Source: Octopus bimaculoides (taxonomy: Eukaryota). From it: a stretch of DNA of 40,308 bases. The stretch is taken from NCBI RefSeq assembly GCF_001194135.2, contig NC_068981.1:7573727-7614034 (forward strand). Direction: 5' to 3'. Made by a program: the position numbers and the translations under genes. The notes beneath the pieces were generated by a model. It made no database searches, was not told the DNA's origin, and worked only from the letters and a program-made list of their open reading frames with translations. The first letter of the stretch is position 1. Each line of letters starts with the position of its first letter. Below are positions 22,975 to 39,977 of the stretch, one piece after another.

Positions 22975-23900
22975 GCAGTTACGATGGATTACATTGACAT
23001 TGGCGCAGAAGATATACTTCTAGCCATAGATAAGGTGGATGCAAACTCAACTGCTGGTCTTGATGGTTTCCCAGCAATCCTCCTCAAAACGTGTAAGCCC
23101 TGCGCTACCAGCGCCCAAAACTGGACGTATTACTTACAGGGTAGACTGGCCCACTGGCAATTACAATCCCAGAATTTAAATCAGTGCGGGACCTGGGTAT
23201 CGACATGAGTGATGATACTTCTTTCCTAGTGCACATTATCAAGATGGCGACAAAGTGCAGACGGCTGGCTGACTGAATCCTGAGAACCTTCAGAACCAGA
23301 GAGGAGGAAATCATGATGGTCCTCAGCCGTCTGGACTAGTGTAAAATTAACAGCGGACTTTGAAACAATTCAGCGAAGCTTCAGAAAGAAGATCGTCTCA
23401 TTGCAAAAGCTCAGCTACTGGGAAAGGCTGAAGCAGCTACGATTCTACTCCCCGGAACGAAGGCGAGAGAGGTATGCAGTAATATATGGGAGAATATACG
23501 AAAAAACAACAACAGACGAGGACAGGTGGTGTAAATAACAAAAGGATGTATTAGTATGACGCTCGGGAATACATCTGGAAGATCCTGTAAGGGATGGTGC
23601 CAAATTTTGGCATGGAAAGCTACACAAATGACTCAACGGGTCGTCACTGCACAACACCAAGGATCCCAGTAATGCTGTCGTTCTTCAGGACTAGTTACTG
23701 CAACAGCCTGGGTTTCAGGGGCCCACAGCTTTTTAAAATTCTCCGAAAGAGCCTGAGGGATCGACACAAAGTAGATTTAAGTGTTTTCAAATCAAAACTG
23801 GATCTCTTCCTGTCGAGAGTCCCAGATGAACCTACCTCGCAGCAGGAAGCGCAAATGAGGGTAGCGACATCAAACACCCATATTCACCGAACACCACATA
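22975..23900 (+). mobile_element. CR1/L2-group LINE 3' part with the RT core deleted; carries a small insert at ~23505-23575
   Basis: MDYIDIGAEDILLAIDKVDANSTAGLDGFPAILLK jumps to VRDLGI; ILRTFRTR; YWERLKQL..ERRRERY; FKSKLDLFLSRVPDEP. Confidence 0.8.
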
Positions 23901-25949: not shown

Positions 25950-26110
25950 CCCAAAAAACAATAGACGAAGATGGGTGTGTAAACAACAAACAGATGTATT
26001 AGTTTAACGCTCGGGAAGTGAGTAAGTCTTTTACGTTTCGAGCCTACGCTCTTCAACAGAAAGGAACACAGAAATAAACAGGGAGAGAAAATAGAAAAAG
26101 GGAGAGAAAA
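25950..26110 (-). mobile_element. Short interspersed repeat carrying a variant hammerhead fold (26027-26064)
   Basis: Homologous to 33885-34043 (+) and partly to 23505-23575. Minus strand: CCTTT-CTGTTGA-A-GAGC/GTAG/GCTC-GAAAC-GT-A-AAAG. Confidence 0.7.
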
Positions 26111-26574
26111 TAGAAAAAAGGTTTAATGGCTAGCAAGCTATCATGGCGAATGCCGGACAGAGGTAGTCAGACAGGAGAGCTAGGAAAAAGGGGAGATAAA
26201 AGAAAAGTAGAGAGAGTGAGTGGGAGGTTGACATATAATATAATTGTTTATGCTTATTGAAATGAAACCTGTAAAATATAACTGTCAACATTCTCACTGG
26301 TTATTGTACATCCTTAATGCGATGGCATAATGGTGAGGAGGATTGCTGTTAATGTTCTTCAAGGAATAGGTAATTACCTCCCTTTTCATAAAACTTTTTC
26401 TTTATGCGCTTGATTCATTTGGTCTATTTATATTCAGTCGTTTCATTGCATCAGTTTCTGCATATACAATCCGAATATATACATGCTTTTTTTTTTTTGC
26501 TTTATTTTATGGATTACGGCAGAGCAGAACAATTCCTCACCAATTCCACACAAACTGCAGAGTGAAAGACCATC

Positions 26575-27483
26575 TTACATGAACAAAATTATGTATATTA
26601 ATATTAGTACTTGTACAATGGAAAAGAAGCCAAGATTAATATTCCTCGAAGAGAAATTGATGCCACATTCATTGCACAACCAGGGACATTTAAATTTTAT
26701 CTCTACATTTGCACATAGTGATGTGTTTACTGTTGTGCAAGGGTCAATTGGATCAGGATATGAACAGTTCAGGAGGCAACGGGGACCAGTTATATGAAAA
26801 TGGTGTNNNNNNNNNNNNNNNNNNNNNNNNNNNNNNNNNNNNNNNNNNNNNNNNNNNNNNNNNNNNNNNNNNNNNNNNNNNNNNNNNNNNNNNNNNNNNN
26901 NNNNNNNNNNNNNNNNNNNNNNNNNNNNNNNNNNNNNNNNNNNNNNNNNNNNNNNNNNNNNNNNNNNNNNNNNNNNNNNNNNNNNNNNNNNNNNNNNNNN
27001 NNNNNNNNNNNNNNNNNNNNNNNNNNNCATATTTCTATATGAATCTGCAACACCTTCACCTGGATAAGTATAATTAAATGAATTTATTTCGGCATGCCAC
27101 GCGTTCACCACTGAACCCCAAGAAACGTATGCTAAGCCAATGTTTTGCACTAAACTATATTTGCCGGGGACATCATTATATTCTCTCTCGCTTTTCTGAT
27201 ATTCACAATTGTTTGCCCATTTCTGTGCAAGAAAAGCAAGTTCCTCATTCCATTTTAATTGAAACATAGCACAGGCTCCAGGTTTAATATCTTCCCGATA
27301 TTTGTTATGCAAAAACAGAATCAATTTCTTATCAAATGTATCTACTTCCACTGATTTCATCAAGAAAGGCGACGGTGGTAAACAAGCCACATGTTGAGGG
27401 CTATCGCTATACATATCAGGGCAGCTATGAATTCCTTCGCACAAGCCCATTATAAGCAGTAAATGTATCCACATTAAATGCAT
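26575..27483 (-). CDS. CAP/CRISP-like copy 3 (~302 aa); middle hidden by gap 26807-27027
   Basis: MHLMWIHLLLIMGLCEG signal peptide; LHNKYRE, WNEELAFLAQKWANNC, VQNIG, WHAE, CPWLCNEC, hydrophobic tail. The track start at 27678 is GTG. Gap length roughly fits the missing ~73 codons. Intactness inside the gap is unknown. Confidence 0.82.
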   Translation of the reverse strand: MHLMWIHLLLIMGLCEGIHSCPDMYSDSPQHVACLPPSPFLMKSVEVDTFDKKLILFLHNKYREDIKPGACAMFQLKWNEELAFLAQKWANNCEYQKSEREYNDVPGKYSLVQNIGLAYVSWGSVVNAWHAEINSFNYTYPGEGVADSYRNMXXXXXXXXXXXXXXXXXXXXXXXXXXXXXXXXXXXXXXXXXXXXXXXXXXXXXXXXXXXXXXXXXXXXXXXXXXHHFHITGPRCLLNCSYPDPIDPCTTVNTSLCANVEIKFKCPWLCNECGINFSSRNINLGFFSIVQVLILIYIILFM

Positions 27484-27554
27484 AATCTCTCCAAAATTTC
27501 CTATTATTTTACTTGTAGAATATACAGCAATGTTCTTTAGAAGCGGAATATTTC

Positions 27555-27726
27555 CTGTAACAGCTTTAATAAAATTCCATATCCTTTTGCTGTTCATTAG
27601 AAATAATGATATTAAAATGGTTATTGTTATTAGGGTGTTTTGAATTTTAAAATGTTTCGCAAAATCTTTTAAATGCACTCACGTAATCCTGTAATCACAG
27701 TTGGTCACTTAGCTATATCCTTTATA
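27555..27726 (-). promoter_or_regulatory. Putative TATA box and 5'-UTR intron of the CAP genes (equivalent sites at 39563-39734)
   Basis: TATAAAG (27726-27720), GTGAGT donor at 27682 (conserved at 16279 and 39690), CTAAT at 27600-27596, TTACAG|G acceptor at 27555. Motif-only prediction. Confidence 0.4.
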
Positions 27727-28314
27727 GAGTCCATTCTATAGGTATCGAATAATTTAGAAAGCTTGTCTTGATGTTGAAATCGTCTCTTATTATAAGGTGA
27801 ATGTGTCTCATTAAATGCTTATAGTCATATATTTATCATAATATAAACGTTCGTTTATATTTAGTTAACATGAAGTGAAGCCACGTAATGCAAAACGCCA
27901 AGTCGTTAACATAAATCACGAGATGAATATTCTCAAAACGCAGAAATTAAATGTAAGGATTCCGTAATAGCATTAGTTAACTGTGTCTGGTTTATGGCTG
28001 AATTTCGCCATATCTATTGCGGAATAGATATAATCCGAAAATAGTCGTTGATTAATTCTAATAATTGAAGCTCGTCGAGTTAATAAAATGTTAAAAATAT
28101 AAAGGAAAATATAAAGAAAATTACAATATTTTGAACATTGAAAATTTCGCCTTTGCTATATTTTCAACGGAGGCGAAGTTTTGCTTGCTTCCATCCATCT
28201 CATTATTAGCAATAGTCCTGTGTATTTTGAGTGCCGCCGTTAAAAATGATTTACTTTCGTAACAGTCAAAGTTTCGAGGAATGTTGATAATATTGTTTTC
28301 AAACTTTGGCAAAA

Positions 28315-28495
28315 GGGGAGACAATTCCTTCGATTACATCGACTTCAGTGCTCAATGGGTACTTATTTTACCGACCCCGAAAGGCGGAAAGACAAAGTCG
28401 ATTACGGTGAAGTTTGAACTCACAACGTAAAGGCGGACGAAATGCCGCTAAGCATTTTGCTCGGTCTACGAGTAACTCAGCCAGTTCACCGCTTC
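28315..28495 (-). mobile_element. tRNA-derived SINE with Deu/Nin-like central domain
   Basis: Minus strand: gcggtgaactggc..tgagttcaaac (B box)..gtcgactttgtctttccgcctttcggggtcggtaaaataagtacc. Related fragments at 9856-9901 and ~33545-33595. Confidence 0.7.
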
Positions 28496-28706
28496 ACAAT
28501 AATAATTTAATACTAGCTCGTTTCATGTCGCTACGCTACTGGTAAAATTATTTGTTAATCATGCAAGTACCTTCATTAGTTGTTCAAAGTGGACGTCTCT
28601 TTTTTATGAGTGTATGTTGCACAGTCTATTTGTTGACAGACACAAGCATACAAATACACACACACAAACAACTACAAAAATAACTATATATAAATCATTT
28701 GTATAC

Positions 28707-28750
<44 letters not shown>

Positions 28751-29094
28751 CCAATTTGGAAGTCTGTGGTGTGCTGCATTGACAGACTGCTGACGTTTTT
28801 AATCAAAACGTGTTAATTACTATGGTGACAACACTACTTATCTTTCTTTCACACGCACACACACACACACACGTACACACACACGCACACACACATACGC
28901 ACACACACACGCACACACACACGCACATGCACACACTATCTCTCTCTTTCTCTCTCTCTCACTCATTGTAACTCTCTCTTAACAATCTTGGGACAGAGAG
29001 AGAAAGAAAGAGAGAGTGAAGAATGAGGGCAGAAATAGGTTTGCTGTTGTAGAGCAGATACGTGGCTAACTAGCCAGAGGGAAGAGCGAGTGAA

Positions 29095-29145
<51 letters not shown>

Positions 29146-29529
29146 GATAGATAGATAGAAAGGGGGAGAGAGGGAAGAAAGAGGGAGAGAGAGAGAGAGT
29201 AGGAAACAGCACAGTGTTAGAGAGAACAGGAAAGAGAAGGTGAATTGCCAGGGTATACTCACAAGTAACAAGGAACAGAGGATTAATGTGATGGTAGAGT
29301 AAAGAAAAGAGAGGTACGAAGGACGTAATATACGCGGCCAGGTGTTGCCAAGAAGACGCTAGTAGGGAGTGGGGGTTTCAGTGATTGGCGAAAACTTGAG
29401 TAGAGGGAAGGGAAGGGGATGGGAAGACAATCATAGTTTATGAAGAGGAAATGTGAGGAAGAGAAAGATACTGTTTAGAAGAGATGTTGTTCGGTTTTTT
29501 GGGGTAGGGTGTGGGAAAAGTTTGTTGTT

Positions 29530-32270
29530 ACATGTGAGTGGGACACGAGTCTTCTAGCAATCAGTTTCGCTTTCGTGGGTGGGTCTTCTCTAGAACCTCA
29601 TATTGCAAAAGCACAACTAGGTCCATTGCCAAATCCTCCGTGAGCCCCAGCATCCTTAAGATCAGTCCTCACCATTTCACCCCATGTCTTCCTGGGTCTC
29701 CTTCTGCCACAAGTACCATCCACTTTAAGTGACAGGTACCTCTTTATACAGCTGCCTTCACACATACGCATCACACGTCGAAACCAACGCATTCTTCTCT
29801 CCTGCAAGCTACGTTTAATCCCTTTTATGCCTAACCTTATTCTCAACGCAGTTGTGTTTTGTCTGTCAAGCAAATTGATGTTGTAATTCCAACGGAGTAT
29901 ACTACTTTCATTCCTCTTCAGTTTATGCATGTCCTCTGCAGTCAGAGTCCACGTCTCACTACCATGTAATATACCCGTTCTCACACAAGCATCATACACC
30001 TCCCTTTCACTCTGAGAGAGAAAGAGAGTCCTCTTGTGGTTCATAGAGGTAGTAGCTCTCTGAACGTCTTCCATCCTATTCTTATTCTAGAAACAATACA
30101 TTCAGAGCATCCACCATCATTGGTAATTTGGTCACCAAAGTAACAGAAATTGTCTACTACCTCAAGAGAGCCTTTGAGAGCGTTTAAGTTCCTCGTACCC
30201 TTAGTGTCTATTCTTCCAGTGCATCTGCCACATACGAAAGCGACCTTATCCGTTAACCTACCTATGATTTCACTGCATCTCTTATGGGTCCAAAGCTTAC
30301 ATTTGGTGCAACAAATGGAATTACGTCCCACTCCTTTCCTACTTATTGAACAGGGCCATTTACATGATGCACGCAGAGTCTTGTCTGCTTTCTTGCTAAC
30401 AACAACTTTAGTCTTTGCTAAGTTAACTTTAAGGCCTTTTCATTCCAGGTTTTGCTTCCAAACTCGAAACTTTTTCGCCAATTCTGCTTCAGATTCTGCA
30501 ATAGGAGCAAGATCATCAGCATATAATAGTTCCAATGGGCATCCAGTTTTCAATTTATCTGTAATGGCCTGGAGAATTATAATGAATATGAGTGGACTAA
30601 GAACTGATCCCTGGTGAATTCCAACTTGTACACTAAATTCATCACCGTATTCAAGGCCGACTCTCACCTTACTTATTGCTGTACATAGCTTGAATGGCTC
30701 TAATAAGCCACTTCTCTACTCCTAGCTTCTTTAGAGACCACCAGATAAGAGAGCGGCGAATCTTGTCGAAAGCTTTCTCCAGGTCGACGAAGGCTAAGTA
30801 CAATGGCTTACTTTTGGCCAAATACTTTTCTTCAAACCGTCTTACTATGAAGATGGCATCTGACGTACTTCCCCCTGGAACAAAACCAAACTCTTCATCT
30901 CATGTAGCTTAATTTTGTCCCTTATCAGTTGAGATATAACTCTCTCTGAAATGTTCACGACCTGGTCGAGCAGACTGATGCCTCTGTATTTGTTTCTAGC
31001 TAAGGCATCACATTTACCCTTGTAGCAACTAACTATAATACTACTAGACCAGTCTTTGGGGTTGACACTTTCCTGAATAACCTGATTAACTATCCAAGTG
31101 ACTAGGCTGTATCTCACACCACTTGATATTCTAATCATCTCGGCAGTGATACCAGATGGTTCGGGGTTTTCCCAGTCTTCATAGTCTTAATTGCATTATC
31201 TATTATACTGATATCACCTCTGATGGCTGGTCCCTCGGTTAGTTCGATATTTGAAAGACACTCCTTCGCCCAATCACACTTCACATTTAATAAACTTTCA
31301 TAATGGCACCTCCGCGCAGCTTTCTTCTCTGAGTCACTAAGCCCAAGCATGCCATTATCCATTCACTCCTCACCCGCCACATCTCTATTCTCTCTGATAC
31401 ACTGCTTTGTAATCCTGAACACTTCACGCCTCTGATCCTCACGCTGTAGAACATTGGCAAACTTCTTACCTTCTGCTATTCCTTTTGTTATGTAAACATG
31501 ACGCATAACCTCCTTTCTGGCTCCCTGATATAATGTTCTCCTTCCACCGATTGTCTAGTCCTACCAGGCCTGTCTCTTCCTTTTTATAGCACTGTCCACC
31601 TCCTTGTTCCACCACCATATCGCCCTGGGGACTTTGCATCGACCACAGATTTTATCAGCGATCCACAGTAAATTGTCCTGCAGGAACTTCCAATTGTCTA
31701 GTTGTCCTCCGCCTTCTCTCTACCATCATAGGCTTCCAGTAGAATGTCTCTGAACTTTTGTTGGTTTGCTGGATCTTTGAACTTCTATATTCTTCTTTTC
31801 CAGCATAGTTTACTTCCCCAAGTCTCTCTTGTCCAAATTCTGGAGTCACAAACTAGTAGCCTATGTTGGGGTGTACACTCTTAACCCGGGAAGGACTTAG
31901 CATTTATGAGCATCAGCCTAATTCGTTGCCTAGTGAGGAGGTAGTCAACTTGGCTTATGTTCCAGACTGATAAGTGATAAGGTGGCTGGCTAGCTTTCTG
32001 AAGTTAGTGTTACAGACCATAAGATCATTTGTATCACAAGGCTGAGGTAGTCTTGTTCCCTCCTCCTTCCTGGAGCTAAAGCCATAACCACCATGCGCCC
32101 CATGGAATCCATGGGACGGCTACCAAACACGTTCATTTAAATTCGTCAGCCACAATAATGAAATCTGATAATGAAAGCACCTCGTAGAATTGGTCCTTCT
32201 GATCATCAACCATCCCAGCCTGTGGAGCACAGGCAGAGATAAATGTAATTGTTAATCTATCAATGGGATG
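29530..32270 (-). mobile_element. Near-complete but decayed RTE-clade LINE ORF (AP endonuclease, RT, PHD finger, thumb)
   Basis: EN: CDTNDLMVCNTNF..SQVDYLL..HRLLVCD. RT: YKGK.DAL..YRGISLL, GIHQGSVLSPLIF, LLYADD, YFGD, MRWF..VMRM, RPRKTW. Multiple stops and frameshifts. Confidence 0.92.
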
Positions 32271-32367
32271 TCTCAGCTTAATAACCCTGTCGCATACACT
32301 GATTACCTCAATTATCTTATCTACTTACTTCTCTGCTAAGATTATGCTCACACCACCCATTCCATAT

Positions 32368-32471
32368 ATATTGTGGCTGTGTCGTAAGAAACTTGTTTCT
32401 GAACCACGTGGTTACGGGTTCAGTCCACTGCGTGCCACCTTGGGCAAGTGTCTTCTACTATAATCTCGGGA
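32368..32471 (+). mobile_element. 5' head of the 1143-type SINE
   Basis: tgtggctgtgtcgtaagaaacttg..gggttcagtccactgcgtgccaccttgggcaagtgtcttctactata. Confidence 0.75.
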
Positions 32472-32804
32472 GCTCCTCGTAGTACTGTCAGGCAAGAGAT
32501 TTCTGGAAATTATCGAATGTCCACCTCAGCCCGTCAATTTCTACCGACGCCCAGATCTTCCTCTGACATCATCGTCTTTCTTACATTCCTTTAACCCTCT
32601 ATCAGACGTCACTGTTGACTTACCACCGATAATACTTTCCGACTGGTAGAGGAACGCGACAGGGCGTTTGACGAACTTTCAAATGCAGAGTGCCCCCTTC
32701 GCTCTTTACTTGTCTCAGAAATACATCTATGTCAAGGACACGAAATGTGAAAAACCTACCGACAAAAGGCAAGCACACCTACTCACCGTCAAGGAATGGT
32801 GGAA

Positions 32805-33345
32805 GATTTCTGCGCAGCCTCAGTGCTTCTCTGCACAGACTCAGTTTTTGTCTGCGAAAATTTAGTGATTGGCTGCACAGCCTCAGCTCTTGTATGTGCT
32901 GGATCATCCCTTGTCTGCGTAGCGTCAGCCCTTGTACACGCAGCCTCAGTCCTTGTCTGTGCAGCACCTGTGCTTGTCTGTGCAACCTGTGATTATCTCT
33001 ACAGATAATCATAGGTTGCGCGATTATCTATGCGCGATTATCTATGCGCGATTATCTGCGCAGCCTCAGCGCCTGACTGCGTAGCTGCAGCCCTTGTGCG
33101 CGCAGCCCCAGTGCTTGTCGGCGCAGCCCCAGTGCTTGTCGGCGCAGCCCCAGTGCTTGTCGGCGCAGCTCCAGTGTTTGTCTGCGATGCGCAGCTTAGA
33201 GCTCTTACATGCGCAGCCTCAGTTCTTGTCTGCGCAGCTTCAACCCTTGTGTACGCATTCTCACCGGTTGTCTGCGCAGCGTAAAGTCCCTGTGTCTGCA
33301 ACCTCAGCGCTTGCCCTTGTATTCGCAGCTTCAGCCATGGCATGA
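32805..33345. repeat. Degenerate 21-bp tandem array (consensus ~GCGCAGCCTCAGTGCTTGTCT), interrupted by a 14-bp triplication at ~33018-33060
   Basis: Three near-perfect units gcgcagccccagtgcttgtcg at ~33100-33165 and many variants either side. Confidence 0.9.
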
Positions 33346-33884
33346 TCTCAACTTCTGTTTAAGTGCTGATGGTAGGAAAAGTCAAAATAGATATAATAAA
33401 AAAATAATGGCAATAATATAATATAAAATAAATTAGGATGAAGTAAAACAAAATTATGAACGATAATGACAAAATAAAAATAAATGATCGCTTCTTTAGG
33501 CACAAATTCGAGCTGGGTGGGCATGTTTTAATGACATAGAAGACAGTATTTAACTGGTACATTATCTTATCGACCTCCAGGGGATGAAAATGCAATACTG
33601 ACCTTAACAGGATTTGATCTCATAATGTAATGATCCTGAAAAAATACTGCAATTTATTTGTTCGATGATCTAATAATTCATACATGTATATATACAGTAT
33701 ATGTATGTATGTATGTATGTATGTATGCAGGTATGTATGTGTAGATATAGATATAGATATATGTATATATATGTATATACATACATATAAATATATAGAA
33801 ATATATATATATATGTGTGTGTGTGTGTGTATGTGTGTGTGTGCGTGTATATATATATATATATAGCCATGATACATCGTTGAC

Positions 33885-34043
33885 CAAACACCATTCAATT
33901 TTTTACTGTGTTTTTCTCCTTGTTTTCTCCGTATTCTTTCTGTTGAAGAGCGTAGCTCGAAACGTTAAAGACTTTCTGTATTCCCGAGCCTCAAACTAAT
34001 ACATCCTTTTGTTGTTTACACCACCTGTCCTCGACTGTTTTTT
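33885..34043 (+). mobile_element. Second copy of the variant-hammerhead repeat (fold at 33935-33971)
   Basis: TCTTT-CTGTTGA-A-GAGC/GTA/GCTC-GAAAC-GT-T-AAAGA; downstream sequence matches 25950-26030 in reverse complement. Confidence 0.7.
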
Positions 34044-34138
34044 NNNNNNNNNNNNNNNNNNNNNNNNNNNNNNNNNNNNNNNNNNNNNNNNNNNNNNNNN
34101 NNNNNNNNNNNNNNNNNNNNNNNNNNNNNNNNNNNNNN

Positions 34139-34171
<33 letters not shown>

Positions 34172-35115
34172 TATAAATATACATATAGATTGGACATGGG
34201 CGATTCTTGTCTTGCGATTCACCGTCAAACGGTTGGGTGGAATTGCGCGAAACATTACACAGTTGTATAGAATCATCTGGTGATGATGCTGGACTTTTTA
34301 TTCTTTTCACAGATCCCGTGGTTAGTGAGATAATCTCCTATAATAATACCCTTGTGTTTATGAATGAGAAAGGAAAGGGTGATACATGATTAAGGAAGGA
34401 AGGGGTGATGTCATGTTTTTTCATAGCTTCCATGATTACCGAGATAATCTATAATAATACTGTTGCGTTTGTGACTGAGACAGAAAGGGGTGATACGTGA
34501 ATAAGGAAGGAAGAGGTGATGCCAGCGTTTTAACTCTGTGTGAATATATGTGTATGTAACGGGGGGGGGGTGAACGTGAATATGTGTGTGTTCGCGCGCG
34601 TGTTTTGAGTTTGTGTGTGTGTGCGTGTGAGCGCGCAATGGAAGGGAGATGGTTAACATTCAACGCTGAAAAGAAAATTCCTACAGCGTTTCAACTCTGT
34701 GTATTTGGTATGTTTCACTTGAGTACAATCTGTTCTCTATAAAGGTATATGTCTGTTTTTTGTTGATATAAAATAATTTCTTCGGTATTTCTCGACCAAA
34801 TTTTATTTAGCATCATTATTATTAAATTTATGCATTTCTAATCAATTTGAAGATATTTGCTATCAAGTTGCAGATTTTTAACAATGCATTTGGTGATTAT
34901 TTGCTTTATTTCTCGGGCAAAATTTACAACTTATAATAAAAGAATAAAATTAATATTTCATTCAAAAATTGATGAGCTTTGTTTTTAGTGATGACTTGAA
35001 ATGTTAAATATTTTTTCTAACTGTATTTGCTTGAAAAAACATACTTTTCTTTATATTAAGCAATTCATTATAATTACTTTTACGATGTGCCTAAATAAAA
35101 ACCATCGTTATAGAT

Positions 35116-35339
35116 CAGCATTTCTCAGCCTTCTTTGTGATTCGGCTTCCCTTGGACATTGAAAAAATCTATTTCGGCTCCCCTGTGTTGATGAAAAATT
35201 TAATTCAGCTCCCCATGATTGTGAGATAGACCGGCCTGCCCATGACAAACCTGACGAAAGGGGGGGTCAGAAAATTTTCGTACAGCTGGAGGATCCAACC
35301 GAAACAGGGGAGCCGAAATGATAAGGTTGAGAAACGCTA
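35116..35339. mobile_element. hAT/Charlie-like MITE
   Basis: TIRs CAGCATTTCTCAGCCTT / AAGGTTGAGAAACGCTA; perfect subterminal inverted repeat ATTTCGGCTCCCCTG (35171-35185) / CAGGGGAGCCGAAAT (35305-35319). No matching TSD seen. Confidence 0.7.
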
Positions 35340-35880
35340 CGCCTGAATTCCTTAACTCTCAGACAACCGCAGGACTACCACTTCACGAACTGCATTTGAA
35401 GGTTGGCGTGCCAATCATGCTGCTAAAGAATTTAGATGCTTCAATAATGTGTAATGGTACGCGAATGATTATCAAAATATCCATCTGCTCCCGAGTTCTG
35501 CAGGCAGCTGGCAGCTGGCAAAGATGTACTTATAACTCCCATGTCCCTCATTCCCTCCGATACGACCTACAAGTTTAAACGGGTGCAATTTCCCATCAAA
35601 CTCTGCTTTGCCATGACAGTCAACAAGGCGCAGGGACAATCACTGCAAGTGGTTGGTTTGACTCTGACAGAGCAAGTATTCTCACATGGACAACTGTATG
35701 TTGGCTGCTCCCGTGCTGGCATTCCCCCGTGGTTGGTCTTTCCATTTGTGCACTCGAGGGAAGGACGAAAAATGTTGTCTACCAAGAGGCACTCCAACGA
35801 TAACAATGGCAACTTCAACTGCTCCAATTTCAACTCCGCAATTTTTTCATCGTCCCGCCAGCCCACGTAAGTTTAGTCTT
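35340..35880 (+). mobile_element. Helitron RepHel C-terminal (Pif1-type helicase) fragment
   Basis: PEFLNS..GLPLHELHLKVGVPIMLLKNL..CNGTR; QFPIKLCFAMTVNKAQGQSL..VFSHGQLYVGCSR; ends NVVYQEAL. Frameshifted. Confidence 0.92.
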
Positions 35881-35999
35881 GCTTTGCGCTCCTTACTAAC
35901 TCACCATGACTGACATTCTTTTTTTTTTTCTACCAAGATCCATCGTCCAAACAACACTTCGCGTCCACTTCTTCCTTTATTTATCTTTTNNNNNNNNNN

Positions 36000-36060
<61 letters not shown>

Positions 36061-36674
36061 CAGATATATATATATAGAGAAAACAAAGTTATTTTATTCC
36101 AGATTGGTAGAAATATAGGAAAAACAGAAGTTGAAAATGCACTGAGAATAGTTAAAATTATGTTTTATTAATATATTTGAAGCTTCAAACGGTTTCACAT
36201 TTTACACTGATTTTCAAAAAGTTCAAATAGAAAGACATGGCATATCTTGTACCTGTCTTGCTTCTAACAAATATTTGAAGTTTGCCCTGTTTTTATAGGG
36301 AGTTCATGGCTCAAATTAATATGTTTTGAATAATATTTGATTAGTAGAGGATAGTCACATGACAGGTCTTAGAAACGTTTGTAGGTTCCCCGCTACGTCC
36401 GTGTATTAGTATCAAGTGACAATGTTTGGAGTCGTAAGTTATAGCTGATACGTTTGATTGCGCATGTCCAAACAATCAATGCTCTGAATGTTTTCTACGC
36501 ACACACATACATACATATATACACGCGTGTGCGTGTGTGTGTACATAAATGTATATTTCTACGTCATCATTCAGTTTTATTTCAAGATTTCTTGTCAATA
36601 GAGAAAGAACCGGTTTCTAACCTAGATCCAAGGCTCCTTCATTGGAATTTCAACATCAACAGCAGGGTATTTTG

Positions 36675-36708
<34 letters not shown>

Positions 36709-36747
36709 TGTATGGATGGATGGATGGATGGATTGTAGGATGGATGG

Positions 36748-37015
36748 ATGTAGTGAAGGCGGTATAGCCTTAATAGTTAGGATATTCAGTGCACGGTGGT
36801 AAGTTCGATTCCTGGAGTTCAATTTCCGCCGGCGCGTTGTGTCCTTTCATAGTGCCCCAGTCCACTCGGCTGGTAAACATGAGTTGTACCTATGATTTAA
36901 AGGGCTAATCTTTCTACAATCTTTGTCACGGTGAGTCTCCCCGAGAACTACGTTAAGGGCACGCGTGTGTGTGGAGTACTCAGCCACTTACACGTTGATT
37001 CCATGACCGGGTGTC
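36748..37015 (+). mobile_element. tRNA-derived SINE, third family, decayed
   Basis: tagccttaatagttagg (A-box-like), aagttcgattcc/gagttcaatttcc (B-box-like), gcgttgtgtcctt, ..gagaactacgttaagggc. Confidence 0.6.
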
Positions 37016-37124
37016 AGTTTATGTATGTATTGTGTGTATACACATTAATTCATACATACATACATACATTCATTCATACATACATACATTCATTCATACA
37101 TATATATATCTATATCCATACACT

Positions 37125-37156
<32 letters not shown>

Positions 37157-38564
37157 CAGACATAAATACATACATACTAAATCCCAAAGATGGAGCCTTG
37201 TATCATTGTTGGAAACTGGCTTCCTCCTCACTGGAAAATTTGAAGAAACATACATACATTTAAATATATATGAGCATGTCTAGAGATGTAATTATATGCG
37301 TGAGAATACATACAAAACATAGAAATCTTCACATACATACATACATACATACATACATACANNNNNNNNNNNNNNNNNNNNNNNNNNNNNNNNNNNNNNN
37401 NNNNNNNNNNNNNNNNNNNNNNNNNNNNNNNNNNNNNNNNNNNNNNNNNNNNNNNNNNNNNNNNNNNNNNNNNNNNNNNNNNNNNNNNNNNNNNNNNNNN
37501 NNNNNNNNNNNNNNNNNNNNNNNNNNNNNNNNNNNNNNNNNNNNNNNNNNNNNNNNNNNNNNNNNNNNNNNNNNNNNNNNNNNNNNNNNNNNNNNNNNNN
37601 NNNNNNNNNNNNNNNNNNNNNNNNNNNNNNNNNNNNNNNNNNNNNNNNNNNNNNNNNNNNNNNNNNNNNNNNNNNNNNNNNNNNNNNNNNNNNNNNNNNN
37701 NNNNNNNNNNNNNNNNNNNNNNNNNNNNNNNNNNNNNNNNNNNNNNNNNNNNNNNNNNNNNNNNNNNNNNNNNNNNNNNNNNNNNNNNNNNNNNNNNNNN
37801 NNNNNNNNNNNNNNNNNNNNNNNNNNNNNNNNNNNNNNNNNNNNNNNNNNNNNNNNNNNNNNNNNNNNNNNNNNNNNNNNNNNNNNNNNNNNNNNNNNNN
37901 NNNNNNNNNNNNNNNNNNNNNNNNNNNNNNNNNNNNNNNNNNNNNNNNNNNNNNNNNNNNNNNNNNNNNNNNNNNNNNNNNNNNNNNNNNNNNNNNNNNN
38001 NNNNNNNNNNNNNNNNNNNNNNNNNNNNNNNNNNNNNNNNNNNNNNNNNNNNNNNNNNNNNNNNNNNNNNNNNNNNNNNNNNNNNNNNNNNNNNNNNNNN
38101 NNNNNNNNNNNNNNNNNNNNNNNNNNNNNNNNNNNNNNNNNNNNNNNNNNNNNNNNNNNNNNNNNNNNNNNNNAGAGAGAGAGAGAGAGAGAAAGAAAAT
38201 AGAGGCTTGACATATAATTGTTTATGCTTATTGAAATGAAACATGTAAAATATAACTGTCAACATTCTCACTGGTTATTGTACATCCATAATGCGATGGC
38301 ATAATGGTGAGGAGGATTGTTGTTAATGTTCTTCAAAGAATAGGTAATTACCTCCCTTTTCATAATTGTTTTTTTTATTTATGCACTTGATTCATTTGGT
38401 CTATTTATATTCAGTCGTTTCATTGCATCGCTTCCTTGTCACTGCATATAGAATCCGAATATATACTTGCTTTTTCTTGGCATTTTTTATGGATTACGGC
38501 CGAGCAGAACATGAGTGTCATTGGTAGTATACGAAATGGGACGATCCAAATTCCTGACCAATAT

Positions 38565-39491
38565 TTAAATACTGCGAAGCGAAAGACTAACGAACATGAG
38601 CAAGGTTGTGCATCTTAATCTTAATGGTTGTCTGATGAAAGAGAAACCATCACTTTTATTTCTCGCTGAGATGGGTTTAACGTTACATTCGTTGCACATC
38701 CAGGGACATTTAAATTTTGTCTCGAACTTTGCACATATTGATTTCTTTGCAGCATCGCACGGGTCGGATGGATCGGGAAATGTACAGTTCAGGGAACAGT
38801 CCTTGCTAATTATATGTAATTCGTCATAACATGTACACTTACACGTATCGGGGTCCAGGTGACCACCATTGTAACAAATTTCGTTATGGCATTTAAAAAT
38901 TTTTATCTCGTCTTTACATTCTTTATAAATGGGTTCTTTCGGATCTTCAACAGGAGCGTAGTTGCAGACCCGAAAATCACCGAGATTGGAACAGATTGAC
39001 ACCGCACAGCCAATGTGATGAGATGTGCTGCGTATCATCTTCTTATATGAATCTGCAACACCTTCTCGTGGATCAGAATTATTAAATGATAACATTTCTG
39101 TATGCCATGCTCTCAATAATCCATCCCAGGTGGTGTATCCCATGCCAATGTTCTGATCAACATTATATCTACCAGGTACCTTATTATATTCTCTCTTAAT
39201 CTTCTTAAATTCACAGTTGTTTGCCCATTGCTGTGCAAGGAAAGCAAGTTCTACATTCCAGTATAATGGAAACATGCTGCATGGTTTAGGATTAACGTCT
39301 TCCCGGTAGTGGTTATGTATAGTCAATATTATGTACTGTTCAGCTGCACTAACTTCCACTGCTTCTACACACTTTGGCGACTTTTTTAAACAAGCCACAT
39401 GGTCAGGGTTAAATCTATACCTTTCAGGGCATTTATCAACTTTATCGCACAAGCCCACTATAAGCAGTAAATGTATCCACATTAAATGCAT
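38565..39491 (-). CDS. CAP/CRISP-like copy 4 (308 aa), intact, CDS intronless
   Basis: MHLMWIHLLLIVGLC signal; IHNHYRE, WNVELAFLAQQWANNC, DQNIG, WHTE, IGCAVSIC, RVCNYAP, CYNGG..CKCTC, ShKT-like C-x8-C-x7-C-x8-C-x3-C-x2-C, hydrophobic tail. The track start at 39686 is GTG. Confidence 0.92.
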   Translation of the reverse strand: MHLMWIHLLLIVGLCDKVDKCPERYRFNPDHVACLKKSPKCVEAVEVSAAEQYIILTIHNHYREDVNPKPCSMFPLYWNVELAFLAQQWANNCEFKKIKREYNKVPGRYNVDQNIGMGYTTWDGLLRAWHTEMLSFNNSDPREGVADSYKKMIRSTSHHIGCAVSICSNLGDFRVCNYAPVEDPKEPIYKECKDEIKIFKCHNEICYNGGHLDPDTCKCTCYDELHIISKDCSLNCTFPDPSDPCDAAKKSICAKFETKFKCPWMCNECNVKPISARNKSDGFSFIRQPLRLRCTTLLMFVSLSLRSI

Positions 39492-39977
39492 AATCTCTCC
39501 AAAATTTCCTATTCTTTTACTTGTAGAATATACTGCAATGTTCTTTAGAAGCGGAATATTTCCTGTAACAGCTTTAATAAAATTCCATATCCTTTTGCTG
39601 TTCATTAGAAATAATGATATTAAAATGGTTATTGTTATTAGGGTGTTTTGAATTTTAAAATGTTTCGCAAAATCTTTTAAATGCACTCACGTAATCCTGT
39701 AATCACAGTTGGTCACTTAGCTATATCCTTTATAGAGTCCATTCTATAGGTATCGAATAATTTAGAAAGCTTGTCTTGATGTTGAAATCGTCTCTTATTA
39801 TAAGGTGAATGTGTCTCATTAAATGCTTATAGTCATATATTTATCATAATATAAACGTTCGTTTATATTTAGTTAACATGAAGTGAAGCCACGTAATGCA
39901 AAACGCCAAGTCGTTAAAATAAATCACGAGATAAATATTCTCAAAACGCAGAAGTTAAAAATATGATGTTACAATCT

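What the first reader, a model, noticed from the sequence alone, without database searches (positions are those of the whole stretch)
27437..39959. Promoter and signal-peptide cassette shared between CAP copies 3 and 4, with the breakpoint at the signal-peptide boundary
Seen: 27437-27951 and 39445-39959 differ at only about 6 of 515 positions. Identity collapses right after ..GLC (EGIHSCPDMY vs DKVDKCPERY). The mature regions differ at many synonymous sites too (tat/tac, gat/gac, tgt/tgc, gtc/gta, ccc/cct, ggc/ggt). The 3' flanks (~26225-26520 vs ~38205-38500) are again highly similar and absent from copy 2, whereas the coding region of copy 3 is closest to copy 2. Inference: mosaic genes in which conversion or unequal crossover put different mature domains into the same expression and secretion cassette. 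This resembles the conserved-signal, variable-mature pattern of toxin families, but the synonymous divergence points to recombination rather than selection alone.
Basis: partly seen in the sequence, partly recalled or inferred. Interest (0 to 1): 0.75.

Follow-up and report, generated by a model that had tools for sequence, protein, structure and literature searches.

The report
Mosaic octopus CAP genes from gene conversion
Three neighbouring CAP-family genes in the octopus genome have swapped pieces with each other, so that two of them carry an almost identical upstream region and signal peptide in front of different proteins; this is a clean but ordinary example of how tandem gene families evolve.

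Summary
The window is Octopus bimaculoides chromosome CM046601.1 at about 7.57-7.61 Mb. It holds four single-exon CAP-domain genes on the minus strand: c1, c2 (frame-broken), c3 and c4. A fifth lies 11 kb beyond the window.

In detail: 27437-27951 and 39445-39959 differ at 6 of 515 bases, and identity collapses after the signal peptide.

Recombination is needed. Flanks and signal peptide group c3 with c4. The body, from codon 36 to 45 nt past the stop, groups c3 with c2 (permutation p<5e-6).

Three corrections:
- **Switch point.** The best-fitting switch is at 27381/27378, 60 nt inside the mature region. The 20 codons between carry 15 nonsynonymous and no synonymous c3-c4 differences. The sharp edge is therefore probably a selection boundary, though support is weak (P 0.003-0.09).
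- **Mismatch clustering.** The six mismatches sit at the block ends around a 383-bp perfect core. That core is either a very recent conversion or an assembly collapse.
- **3' flank.** It is present in c2, about 20% diverged.

Promoter function and any venom role are untested. This is a known kind of event, of modest interest.

The parts
38565..39491 (-). c4: intact single-exon CAP gene, 308 codons plus stop (ATG 39491-39489, stop 38567-38565)
   Evidence: ORF. Pfam CAP PF00188 E=6.4e-15. CRISP and GLIPR1 structures match by sequence. It is identical to the ORF call P0001 on CM046601.1.
27028..27483 (-). c3, first sequenced piece: codons 1-152 (ATG 27483-27481), open frame up to the assembly gap
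26807..27027 (.). Assembly gap inside the c3 coding region. It stands for about 70 codons, and continuity and frame are unknown.
26575..26806 (-). c3, second sequenced piece: last 76 codons plus stop (26577-26575)
27437..27957 (-). c3 copy of the shared 5' block: about 470 bp upstream sequence plus the 15-codon signal peptide (27439-27483)
   Evidence: 6 of 515 mismatches against c4. Extent.
39445..39965 (-). c4 copy of the shared 5' block, including the signal-peptide codons 39447-39491
27527..27909 (-). 383-bp core that is 100% identical to c4 39535-39917: very recent conversion or assembly collapse
   Evidence: Exact-run scan. Probability of such a mismatch-free spacing is 0.002. P(0 differences) is at most 2e-8 at the background divergence.
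27379..27438 (-). Codons 16-35 of c3, the N-terminus of the mature protein (c4 counterpart 39387-39446). 15 nonsynonymous and 0 synonymous differences from c4. Informative sites are 14 c4-like, 6 c2-like and 6 private to c3.
26532..27378 (-). c2-type tract in c3, from codon 36 to 45 nt past the stop, interrupted by the gap. 92-96% identical to c2 and about 70% to c4. Its 3' end coincides with a 38-nt deletion in c3.
   Evidence: maximum chi-square breakpoint at 27381/27378.
26216..26531 (-). c3 3' block, similar to c4 38212-38511 (277 of 300 aligned bases identical)
38212..38511 (-). c4 3' block. Its outer end runs into a (CT)n microsatellite and the 812-N gap, so its true extent is unknown.
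14657..16423 (-). c2 repeat unit: a frame-broken CAP copy. The reading frame is broken in the signal-peptide part and again in the CAP domain near 15.74 kb, and the gap 15457-15551 lies inside it. The 5' flank is 90% identical to c3 and c4. The 3' flank is about 80% identical, with indels.
   Evidence: The old gene model P0010 skips the broken part.
27720..27726 (-). TATAAAG 243 nt upstream of the c3 ATG (same at 39728-39734 in c4, altered in c2). This is a candidate core promoter only.
   Evidence: No transcript evidence.
8142..9047 (-). c1: intact 301-codon CAP paralogue, 36% identical to c4, with a different signal peptide and no shared cassette
   Evidence: (P0004).

Best explanation
c2, c3 and c4 are tandem copies of one repeat unit of about 1.75 kb. 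The unit is a single-exon CAP-family gene with about 470 bp of 5' sequence and at least 300 bp of 3' sequence.

c3 is a mosaic made by interlocus (ectopic) gene conversion. Its locus is a sister of c4. This shows in the 3' flank (about 8% diverged), the 5' block and signal peptide, and probably the first 20 mature codons. Its body, from codon 36 to 45 nt past the stop, is c2-type.

A second, very recent exchange (or an assembly collapse) made 383 bp of the 5' block identical in c3 and c4.

The abrupt loss of identity at the signal-peptide cleavage site is most likely not a recombination breakpoint. It is the point where amino-acid-changing substitutions start to accumulate, through diversifying selection or loss of constraint on the N-terminus of the mature protein. 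Upstream of that point the sequence is kept alike. High divergence in the mature part would in turn stop homology-dependent conversion tracts there, which would keep the edge sharp.

Shown: the segment genealogies, the breakpoint interval and the substitution counts. Inferred: the direction of transfer, the selection, and any promoter or secretion function.
For: **Genealogy by segment (informative sites c4-like: c2-like: c3-private)**
- 5' flank plus signal peptide: 38:1:2.
- Codons 16-35: 14:6:6.
- Body piece 1: 13:89:9.
- Body piece 2: 3:76:3.
- Maximum chi-square breakpoint at 27381/27378. Maximum-descent permutation p<5e-6.

**Substitution counts**
- c3 against c4: signal peptide 0 synonymous and 1 nonsynonymous difference. 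Codons 16-36: 0/11.3 synonymous and 17/51.7 nonsynonymous. Codons 37-152: dS about 0.6, dN about 0.32.
- c2 against c3, body: dS 0.04-0.10.
- Conserved-residue codons with a synonymous change: 0 of 20 in codons 1-35 against 15 of 58 in codons 36-152, Fisher p=0.007.

**Flank divergence between c3 and c4**
- 3' flank: 23/300.
- 5' block edges: 6/132, not different from the 3' flank (p=0.30).
- 383-bp core: 0 differences (P at most 2e-8).
- Nonsynonymous 15/46 in codons 16-35 exceeds the 3' flank rate (p=1.3e-5).

**Not an assembly chimera**
- No exact match longer than about 15 nt to c4 or c2 exists at the switch point, read from the alignment. The exact-run scan finds no run of 25 nt or more there.
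- c3 differs from c2 by 4-8% throughout, so it is a distinct locus.
Against: - The placement of the switch at codon 35/36 rests on few sites. For codons 16-35 alone, the synonymous test gives p=0.086 and a star-tree test gives p=0.085.
- An old, unconstrained divergence of this segment is rejected only at P=0.003-0.04, depending on the neutral rate assumed.
- Direction is not resolved. c4's body could be the foreign part instead, though no closer relative of the c4 body was found.
- c2's 5' flank is 10% diverged from c3 and c4, while its 3' flank is about 20% diverged. That needs a further exchange or constraint.
- The middle of c3 is unsequenced.
- No reads, transcripts or other family members could be examined.
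Confidence: 0.6

Rival explanations
1. The recent c3-c4 conversion tract ends exactly at the signal-peptide boundary. Codons 16-35 of c3 are an older, third kind of sequence (a relic or another donor) as diverged from c4 as the body is. No selection needs to be invoked.
For: - Amino-acid identity between c3 and c4 in codons 16-35 (9/20) is close to that of the body (56-57%).
- With an old neutral distance of about 0.26, the 15 nonsynonymous differences are as expected (11.9 expected, p=0.19).
- The star-like site pattern 14:6:6 is not rejected (p=0.085).
- Conversion tracts are expected to stop where homology fails (established knowledge of homology-dependent recombination).
Against: - There are no synonymous differences in codons 16-35. 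P=0.04 with the third-position rate and P=0.003 with the Nei-Gojobori rate. Taken with the signal peptide, the count is 0 of 20 codons against 15 of 58, p=0.007.
- Informative sites in the segment differ from the body (p=4e-7) and lean toward c4.
- The three mismatches at 27450-27526 show that the perfect core ends at least 45 nt upstream of the ATG, not at the cleavage site.
Confidence: 0.3
2. No recent 5' exchange occurred. The 5' block and signal peptide are simply under strong purifying selection as promoter, 5' UTR and secretion signal, while the mature part diverges. The c3-c4 edge would then be due to selection alone.
For: - The 5' flank is less diverged than the 3' flank in both comparisons: c3-c4 5/468 against 23/300 (p=3e-6), and c2-c4 about 10% against about 20%.
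- A TATA-like motif is kept in c3 and c4 and altered in the broken c2.
Against: - The block edges diverge at the neutral rate (6/132) while 383 contiguous bases have no change at all (P=0.002 for such clustering). That looks like a tract, not like scattered constrained motifs.
- Uniform constraint over about 500 bp of upstream DNA is unusual (general knowledge).
- This cannot explain the c2-type body of c3.
Confidence: 0.1
3. Assembly artefact. The near-identity of the 5' block, at least its 383-bp core, comes from collapse or gap-filling of paralogous short reads in this gap-rich short-read assembly.
For: - The window has 8 gaps, and c2 and c3 both break in the same part of the gene.
- Mismatches survive only near the block ends.
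- N-run lengths are demonstrably inexact.
Against: - Both copies of the core lie inside contigs with unique sequence on both sides.
- Collapse needs the true copies to be nearly identical anyway.
- The mosaic junctions at about 27380 and 26532 have no long shared exact sequence and cannot be k-mer chimeras.
Confidence: 0.12

Closest known systems
Interlocus (ectopic) gene conversion and concerted evolution in tandem gene arrays, for example globin, MHC and amphibian or mussel secreted-peptide clusters
   Same: - Adjacent segments of one paralogue have different nearest relatives.
- The tract is bounded on both sides and is roughly 0.85 kb long.
- Donor and recipient both survive a few kb apart in the same orientation.
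- A nearly identical patch sits within otherwise diverged copies.
   Different: - Only three copies could be examined, so the direction and number of events are unresolved.
- One partner (c2) is frame-broken.
- The middle of the recipient is unsequenced.
The 'conserved signal, hypervariable mature region' pattern of secreted toxin and defence peptide families: conotoxins (PMC3862624), funnel-web toxins (PMC4029134), frog and mussel antimicrobial peptides (PMC13128954, PMC5577615)
   Same: - There is a sharp edge at the signal-peptide cleavage site.
- The signal is identical even at synonymous sites.
- Nonsynonymous-only divergence begins right after it.
   Different: - Here the excess is limited to about 20 codons. 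The rest of the mature protein has ω of about 0.5.
- Signal and mature parts lie on one exon.
- These are about 300-residue CAP proteins of unknown function, not short peptides.
- No evidence of venom-gland expression was obtainable.
Molluscan CAP-ShK type II proteins and CRISP-like 'cysteine-rich venom protein' annotations (Mr30-like, pseudecin-like, allurin-like; PMC6409789)
   Same: - N-terminal signal, a CAP domain, then a C-terminal cysteine-rich region with a conserved Cys pattern shared with other mollusc and nemertean proteins.
- The neighbouring paralogue is named 'cysteine-rich venom protein pseudecin' by NCBI.
   Different: - Pfam finds no ShK or EGF domain in the C-terminal part.
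- The histidine of the GHYTQ motif is replaced in c1 and c4, and by translation in c2 and c3.
- Several copies end in a hydrophobic tail that looks more like a membrane or GPI signal than the end of a soluble toxin.

Membership tests
CAP superfamily (CRISP / antigen 5 / PR-1; Pfam PF00188) | Significant match to the CAP domain profile | tested here: met
   c4 E=6.4e-15 and c1 E=1.1e-15, both above the gathering score. Sequence matches to pseudecin, natrin, triflin, GLIPR1 and VAL-4 structures at E 1.7e-13 to 1e-10.
CAP superfamily (CRISP / antigen 5 / PR-1; Pfam PF00188) | Conserved cavity tetrad (two His, two Glu), including the His of the GHYTQ motif | tested here: not met
   In alignment A1 c4 reads ADSYKK and c1 reads TAQYTQ where 8 of 10 homologues have GHYTQ. 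H59, E81 and E132 are kept. c2 and c3 read ADSYRN.
Molluscan CAP-ShK type II architecture (PMC6409789) | C-terminal cysteine-rich region with recognisable EGF-like and ShKT domains | tested here: inconclusive
   Twelve invariant cysteines after the CAP domain align with mollusc and nemertean homologues. Pfam reports no ShK or EGF hit even at E up to 10. The structure model was too poor to judge.
Interlocus gene conversion | Statistically supported change of nearest relative along the sequence (phylogenetic incongruence) | tested here: met
   Informative-site walk with maximum descent 149, permutation p<5e-6. Chi-square 134 at 27381/27378.
Interlocus gene conversion | Tract bounded on both sides by sequence of the other genealogy (non-reciprocal patch rather than a single crossover) | tested here: met
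   c4-like 5' of 27379 and 3' of 26531, c2-like between. The 3' edge is only resolved to 26532-26503, where c3 is equidistant from c2 and c4.
Interlocus gene conversion | Direction of transfer and non-reciprocity shown with an outgroup or population data | not testable with these tools
   Only three copies share the unit. c1 and c0 are too distant at the DNA level.
Toxin-type accelerated evolution (conserved signal, positively selected mature region) | dN/dS > 1 in the mature region | tested here: inconclusive
   Codons 16-35: 15 nonsynonymous against 0 synonymous differences (Fisher p=0.023). Codons 37-152: ω about 0.5. Only two sequences and about 11 synonymous sites.
Toxin-type accelerated evolution (conserved signal, positively selected mature region) | Expression in a venom or secretory gland and secretion of the product | not testable with these tools
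   No transcript or proteome data could be linked to c3 or c4. Papers on cephalopod venom list CAP proteins as a class only. The searches found nothing on this locus.

The most novel reading that the evidence does not exclude
The octopus CAP cluster may use a toxin-like diversification regime. A conversion-homogenised expression and secretion cassette would be kept identical between paralogues. The first 20 or so residues of the mature protein would be driven apart by strong positive selection (ω well above 1 on a background less than 8% diverged). Whole mature bodies would be shuffled between loci by conversion. Recombination and selection would then jointly generate new secreted CAP variants in a cephalopod.
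Probability: 0.2. Interest if true: 0.5.

Novelty: new member of a known kind. Interest (0 to 1): 0.3.

Why it matters
It gives a well-delimited example of interlocus gene conversion in a lineage-specific CAP gene cluster of a cephalopod. It also shows that a sharp drop in identity at a signal-peptide boundary need not be a recombination breakpoint.

For annotation, it flags three things:
- c2 is a broken copy.
- c3 is unverifiable across its gap.
- Paralogue-specific expression of c3 and c4 cannot be measured from reads that map to the 5' block.

If the nonsynonymous burst at the mature N-terminus holds up in more copies and species, it would point to the surface that these uncharacterised CAP proteins use to meet their targets.

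Tried and rejected
- **Close relatives.** Word-indexed protein searches with c4 and with the first c3 piece found no close relatives. They returned only the window's own ORF and P0010, an old gene model of c2. Orthologues and possible donors could not be examined.
- **Exhaustive HMMER search.** It showed a large family, 1018 hits, all at 38% identity or less apart from the window's own copies.
- **Structure.** AlphaFold2 of c4 on a 10-sequence alignment gave mean pLDDT 45.6. That is unusable, so the variable N-terminal segment could not be placed on a structure and no fold search was run.
- **C-terminal domains.** Pfam at E up to 10 found no ShK or EGF domain in the C-terminal region.
- **Wider homology.** Searches upstream of 27957/39965, upstream of the c2 boundary and beyond the 812-N gap gave only scores at the level of shuffled controls or low-complexity matches.
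- **Neighbouring DNA.** The 21 kb before the window (L002) and 9 kb after it (L001, mostly gap) hold one more CAP copy (c0) but no further copy of the cassette.
- **Literature.** Searches found nothing on this locus.
- **Rejected: single unequal crossover as the origin of c3.** That would leave c2-type 3' flank, but c3's 3' flank is c4-type.
- **Rejected: k-mer chimera at the junctions.** No long exact matches exist there.
- **Rejected: c3 and c4 as haplotigs.** Their bodies are 30% diverged and their intergenic DNA is unrelated.

Full report
**Where this is.** The ORF of copy 4 is on record on CM046601.1 of assembly GCA_001194135.2, a 199.9-Mb record. NCBI names the neighbouring paralogue as an Octopus bimaculoides protein. 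Window position w corresponds to about chromosome position 7,573,726 + w. The window is AT-rich and full of microsatellites, and it is cut into nine contigs by eight N runs.

**The gene cluster.** tblastn with copy 4 finds four CAP-domain genes, all single-exon and all on the minus strand:
- c1: 8142-9047, intact, 301 codons.
- c2: about 15177-16081.
- c3: 26575-27483.
- c4: 38565-39491, intact, 308 codons.

A fifth copy, c0 (P0151), lies 11 kb before the window. NCBI names it 'cysteine-rich venom protein pseudecin'.

**Gaps first.** The three gaps inside the finding's interval (34044-34138, 35990-35999, 37362-38173) are intergenic, and each abuts a simple repeat: (AT)n, (AC)n, and (CATA)n with (AG)n. 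They interrupt neither compared block nor the c4 ORF. Two consequences follow:
- The 3' block of c4 runs into (CT)n and the 812-N gap 38 nt later, so its outer end is unknown.
- The 12,008-bp spacing contains 917 N of estimated length.

A gap outside the stated interval matters more. 26807-27027 lies inside the c3 coding region and hides about 70 codons. c4, and the old c2 model P0010, predict about 209 missing bases rather than 221 (my arithmetic from the alignments). Continuity and frame of c3 cannot be tested here. P0010, which carries sequence across c2's own gap, implies about 122 nt where the window has 95 N. N counts therefore say nothing about frame.

**Observation.** 27437-27951 and 39445-39959 differ at 6 of 515 positions.
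- The alignable block runs to 27957/39965. Beyond that there is no detectable homology.
- It holds about 470 bp of upstream DNA plus the 15-codon signal peptide MHLMWIHLLLI(M/V)GLC. Cleavage after GLC is inferred from the -3/-1 rule and from alignment with c1.
- Directly after it the proteins read EGIHSCPDMY (c3) and DKVDKCPERY (c4).

**Anatomy of the repeat unit.** A three-way alignment and BLAST give the following.

| Segment | c3 vs c4 | c2 vs c3 or c4 |
|---|---|---|
| 5' flank | 98.9% (5/468 differ) | 90% to both, over 27452-27828 |
| Codons 16-35 | 75% | about 62-65% |
| Body, 27378-27028 and 26806-26532 | about 70% | c2 vs c3: 91.8% and 96.4% |
| 3' block, 26531-26216 | 92% of aligned bases (277/300) | c2 is homologous but about 20% diverged |

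- The c2-type body of c3 ends at a 38-nt deletion in c3, 45 nt past the stop.
- c2's 3' flank aligns at 141/176 with many indels, scoring 68 against a shuffle maximum of 36.
- c2's reading frame is broken twice relative to c3 and c4: once within the signal-peptide part and once in the CAP domain. Its TATA-like motif is also changed. Intact copies exist (c1, c4).
- I compared the pieces of c2 separately and did not build a frame-corrected version.

**Is recombination needed?** Yes.
- Among 276 variable columns where all three copies align, the counts of c4-like: c2-like: c3-private sites are as follows.

| Segment | c4-like : c2-like : c3-private |
|---|---|
| 5' flank plus signal peptide | 38:1:2 |
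| Codons 16-35 | 14:6:6 |
| Body piece 1 | 13:89:9 |
| Body piece 2 | 3:76:3 |

- A 3SEQ-like maximum-descent statistic of 149 was never reached in 200,000 permutations (p<5e-6).
- c3-c4 synonymous divergence in the body is high: Nei-Gojobori dS about 0.6, and 15 of 58 conserved-residue codons differ. c2-c3 dS is 0.04-0.10.
- Because the c2-type tract is bounded on both sides by c4-type sequence, one unequal crossover cannot produce it. A conversion patch or double exchange is needed.
- The junctions cannot be assembly chimeras. The longest exact matches at the switch are about 15 nt (read from the alignment, with no run of 25 nt or more), and c3 differs from c2 throughout.

**Where is the 5' breakpoint?** The best single breakpoint is between 27381 and 27378 (codon 35/36; chi-square 134). 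That is 60 nt inside the mature region.
- In codons 16-35, c3 and c4 differ at 15 sites, all nonsynonymous. The nine conserved codons are identical.
- With the signal peptide included, 0 of 20 conserved codons carry a synonymous change, against 15 of 58 further on (p=0.007). For codons 16-35 alone p=0.086.
- **Young reading.** If this segment shares the young c3-c4 ancestry of the flanks (d about 0.05-0.08), zero synonymous changes are expected (P=0.42-0.61). The 15 nonsynonymous changes are then a large excess (P at most 1e-6). That would mean diversifying selection on the N-terminus of the mature protein in both lineages.
- **Old reading.** If the segment is as old as the c4 against c2/c3 split, the nonsynonymous count is unremarkable. 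The absence of synonymous change then has P=0.003-0.04.

I favour the young reading, at roughly 60:30. The data are few.

**The block is not uniform.** The six mismatches lie at 27450-27526 and 27910-27946. Between them, 383 bp are identical, and the probability of such a spacing is 0.002.
- The edges (6/132) match the 3' flank divergence (23/300, p=0.30).
- The core is far too clean for that background (P at most 2e-8).
- So c3 and c4 look like sister loci about 5-8% apart, with a very recent conversion of the core. Alternatively, two nearly identical paralogous stretches were collapsed in this short-read assembly.
- Either way the perfect core ends at least 45 nt upstream of the ATG, not at the cleavage site.

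**Most likely history (inferred).**
1. c2 and the c3/c4 ancestor are old paralogues. Third-position and 3'-flank divergence are about 0.2-0.3.
2. The c4-type locus duplicated to give c3 and c4, now about 0.08 apart.
3. A c2-type tract of at least 0.85 kb replaced the body of c3.
4. The 5' region was exchanged or constrained among all three. c2 is only 10% diverged there.
5. Most recently, the 383-bp core was homogenised between c3 and c4.

The reverse polarity, with c4's body as the foreign part, is not excluded, but no closer relative of c4's body was found. High divergence of the mature N-terminus would itself terminate homology-dependent conversion coming from the 5' side. That gives a simple reason why the edge stays at the signal/mature junction.

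**What the genes are.**
- The CAP domain is certain.
- Homologues from molluscs and nemerteans share the cysteine pattern of the C-terminal region. This resembles the CAP-ShK type II proteins described for a gastropod (PMC6409789), but Pfam finds no ShK or EGF domain.
- c1-c4 have lost the histidine of the GHYTQ motif.
- c1, c2 and c3 end in a hydrophobic tail. c4 has lost the ancestral stop, runs nine codons further and has a less hydrophobic tail.
- Function, secretion and tissue of expression are unknown.
- 'Promoter' is a guess. A TATAAAG lies 243 nt upstream of the ATG. An in-frame upstream ATG (27597) and a possible splice acceptor near 27592 lie between them.

**Comparison and verdict.** The mechanism is ordinary interlocus gene conversion in a tandem array. 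The conserved-signal, variable-mature pattern is well known from conotoxins, spider toxins and amphibian or mussel defence peptides. Here it is confined to about 20 codons, with ω about 0.5 over the rest.

This is a real feature, correctly spotted, with the interpretation largely right but the breakpoint probably misplaced and one sub-observation wrong. It is a new member of a known kind, of modest interest.

Noticed in passing
window 2160-2858 (-): Uninterrupted ORF whose last 168 or so residues, from MGNASS, form a four-EF-hand protein of the calcineurin-B type (Pfam EF-hand_7 E=2e-27). Being intronless and next to LINE fragments, it may be a retrocopy.
   Followed up: partly
window 4820-6083 (+) and 29598-30109 (-): Fragments of a non-LTR retrotransposon. 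RVT_1 E=2.9e-12 for 4820-5232, cut by the gap 5233-5406. A related tail fragment lies inverted at 29888-30109, 75% identical to 5634-5850, with further copies in L002.
   Followed up: partly
window 15457-15551 and 26807-27027: c2 and c3 both have their assembly gap in the same part of the gene (c4 codons about 153-222). This suggests the assembler could not separate two nearly identical paralogous stretches there. The old gene model P0010 carries 41 residues across the c2 gap.
   Followed up: partly
window 38565-38594 versus 26575-26577: c4 has lost the stop codon shared by c2 and c3 and runs nine codons further. Its C-terminal tail is much less hydrophobic than those of c1, c2 and c3, which look like membrane or GPI-anchor signals. 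c4 could be soluble while the others are anchored.
   Followed up: no
c4 residues 147-154 (window about 39030-39053); c1 equivalent: The nearly invariant GHYTQLVW motif of CAP domains reads ADSYKKMI in c4, ADSYRNM in c2 and c3, and TAQYTQLVW in c1. One histidine of the CAP cavity tetrad is missing.
   Followed up: no
L002 10001-10924 (chromosome 7,561,490-7,562,413): A fifth CAP paralogue (c0, P0151, 307 aa) lies 11 kb before the window in the same orientation. It is 56% identical to c1 and has no shared 5' cassette. A Logan-derived protein, P0152, is 53% identical to c1 and closely resembles P0151 in alignment A1.
   Followed up: partly
window 25955-26099 versus 33900-34043 (inverted); 23511-23573 versus 33977-34039; 28330-28464 versus two places in L002: Short dispersed repeats (78-94% identical) flank the CAP units, one of them ending exactly at the gap 34044. 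They are probably SINE or MITE-like elements and were not classified.
   Followed up: no
window 27597 / 39605 (-): An in-frame ATG 38 codons upstream of the signal-peptide ATG gives the 346-residue ORF call P0001. It has a weak start context and sits just before a possible splice acceptor (…TTTCTAATGAACAG|C). The true 5' end of the mRNA is unknown.
   Followed up: no
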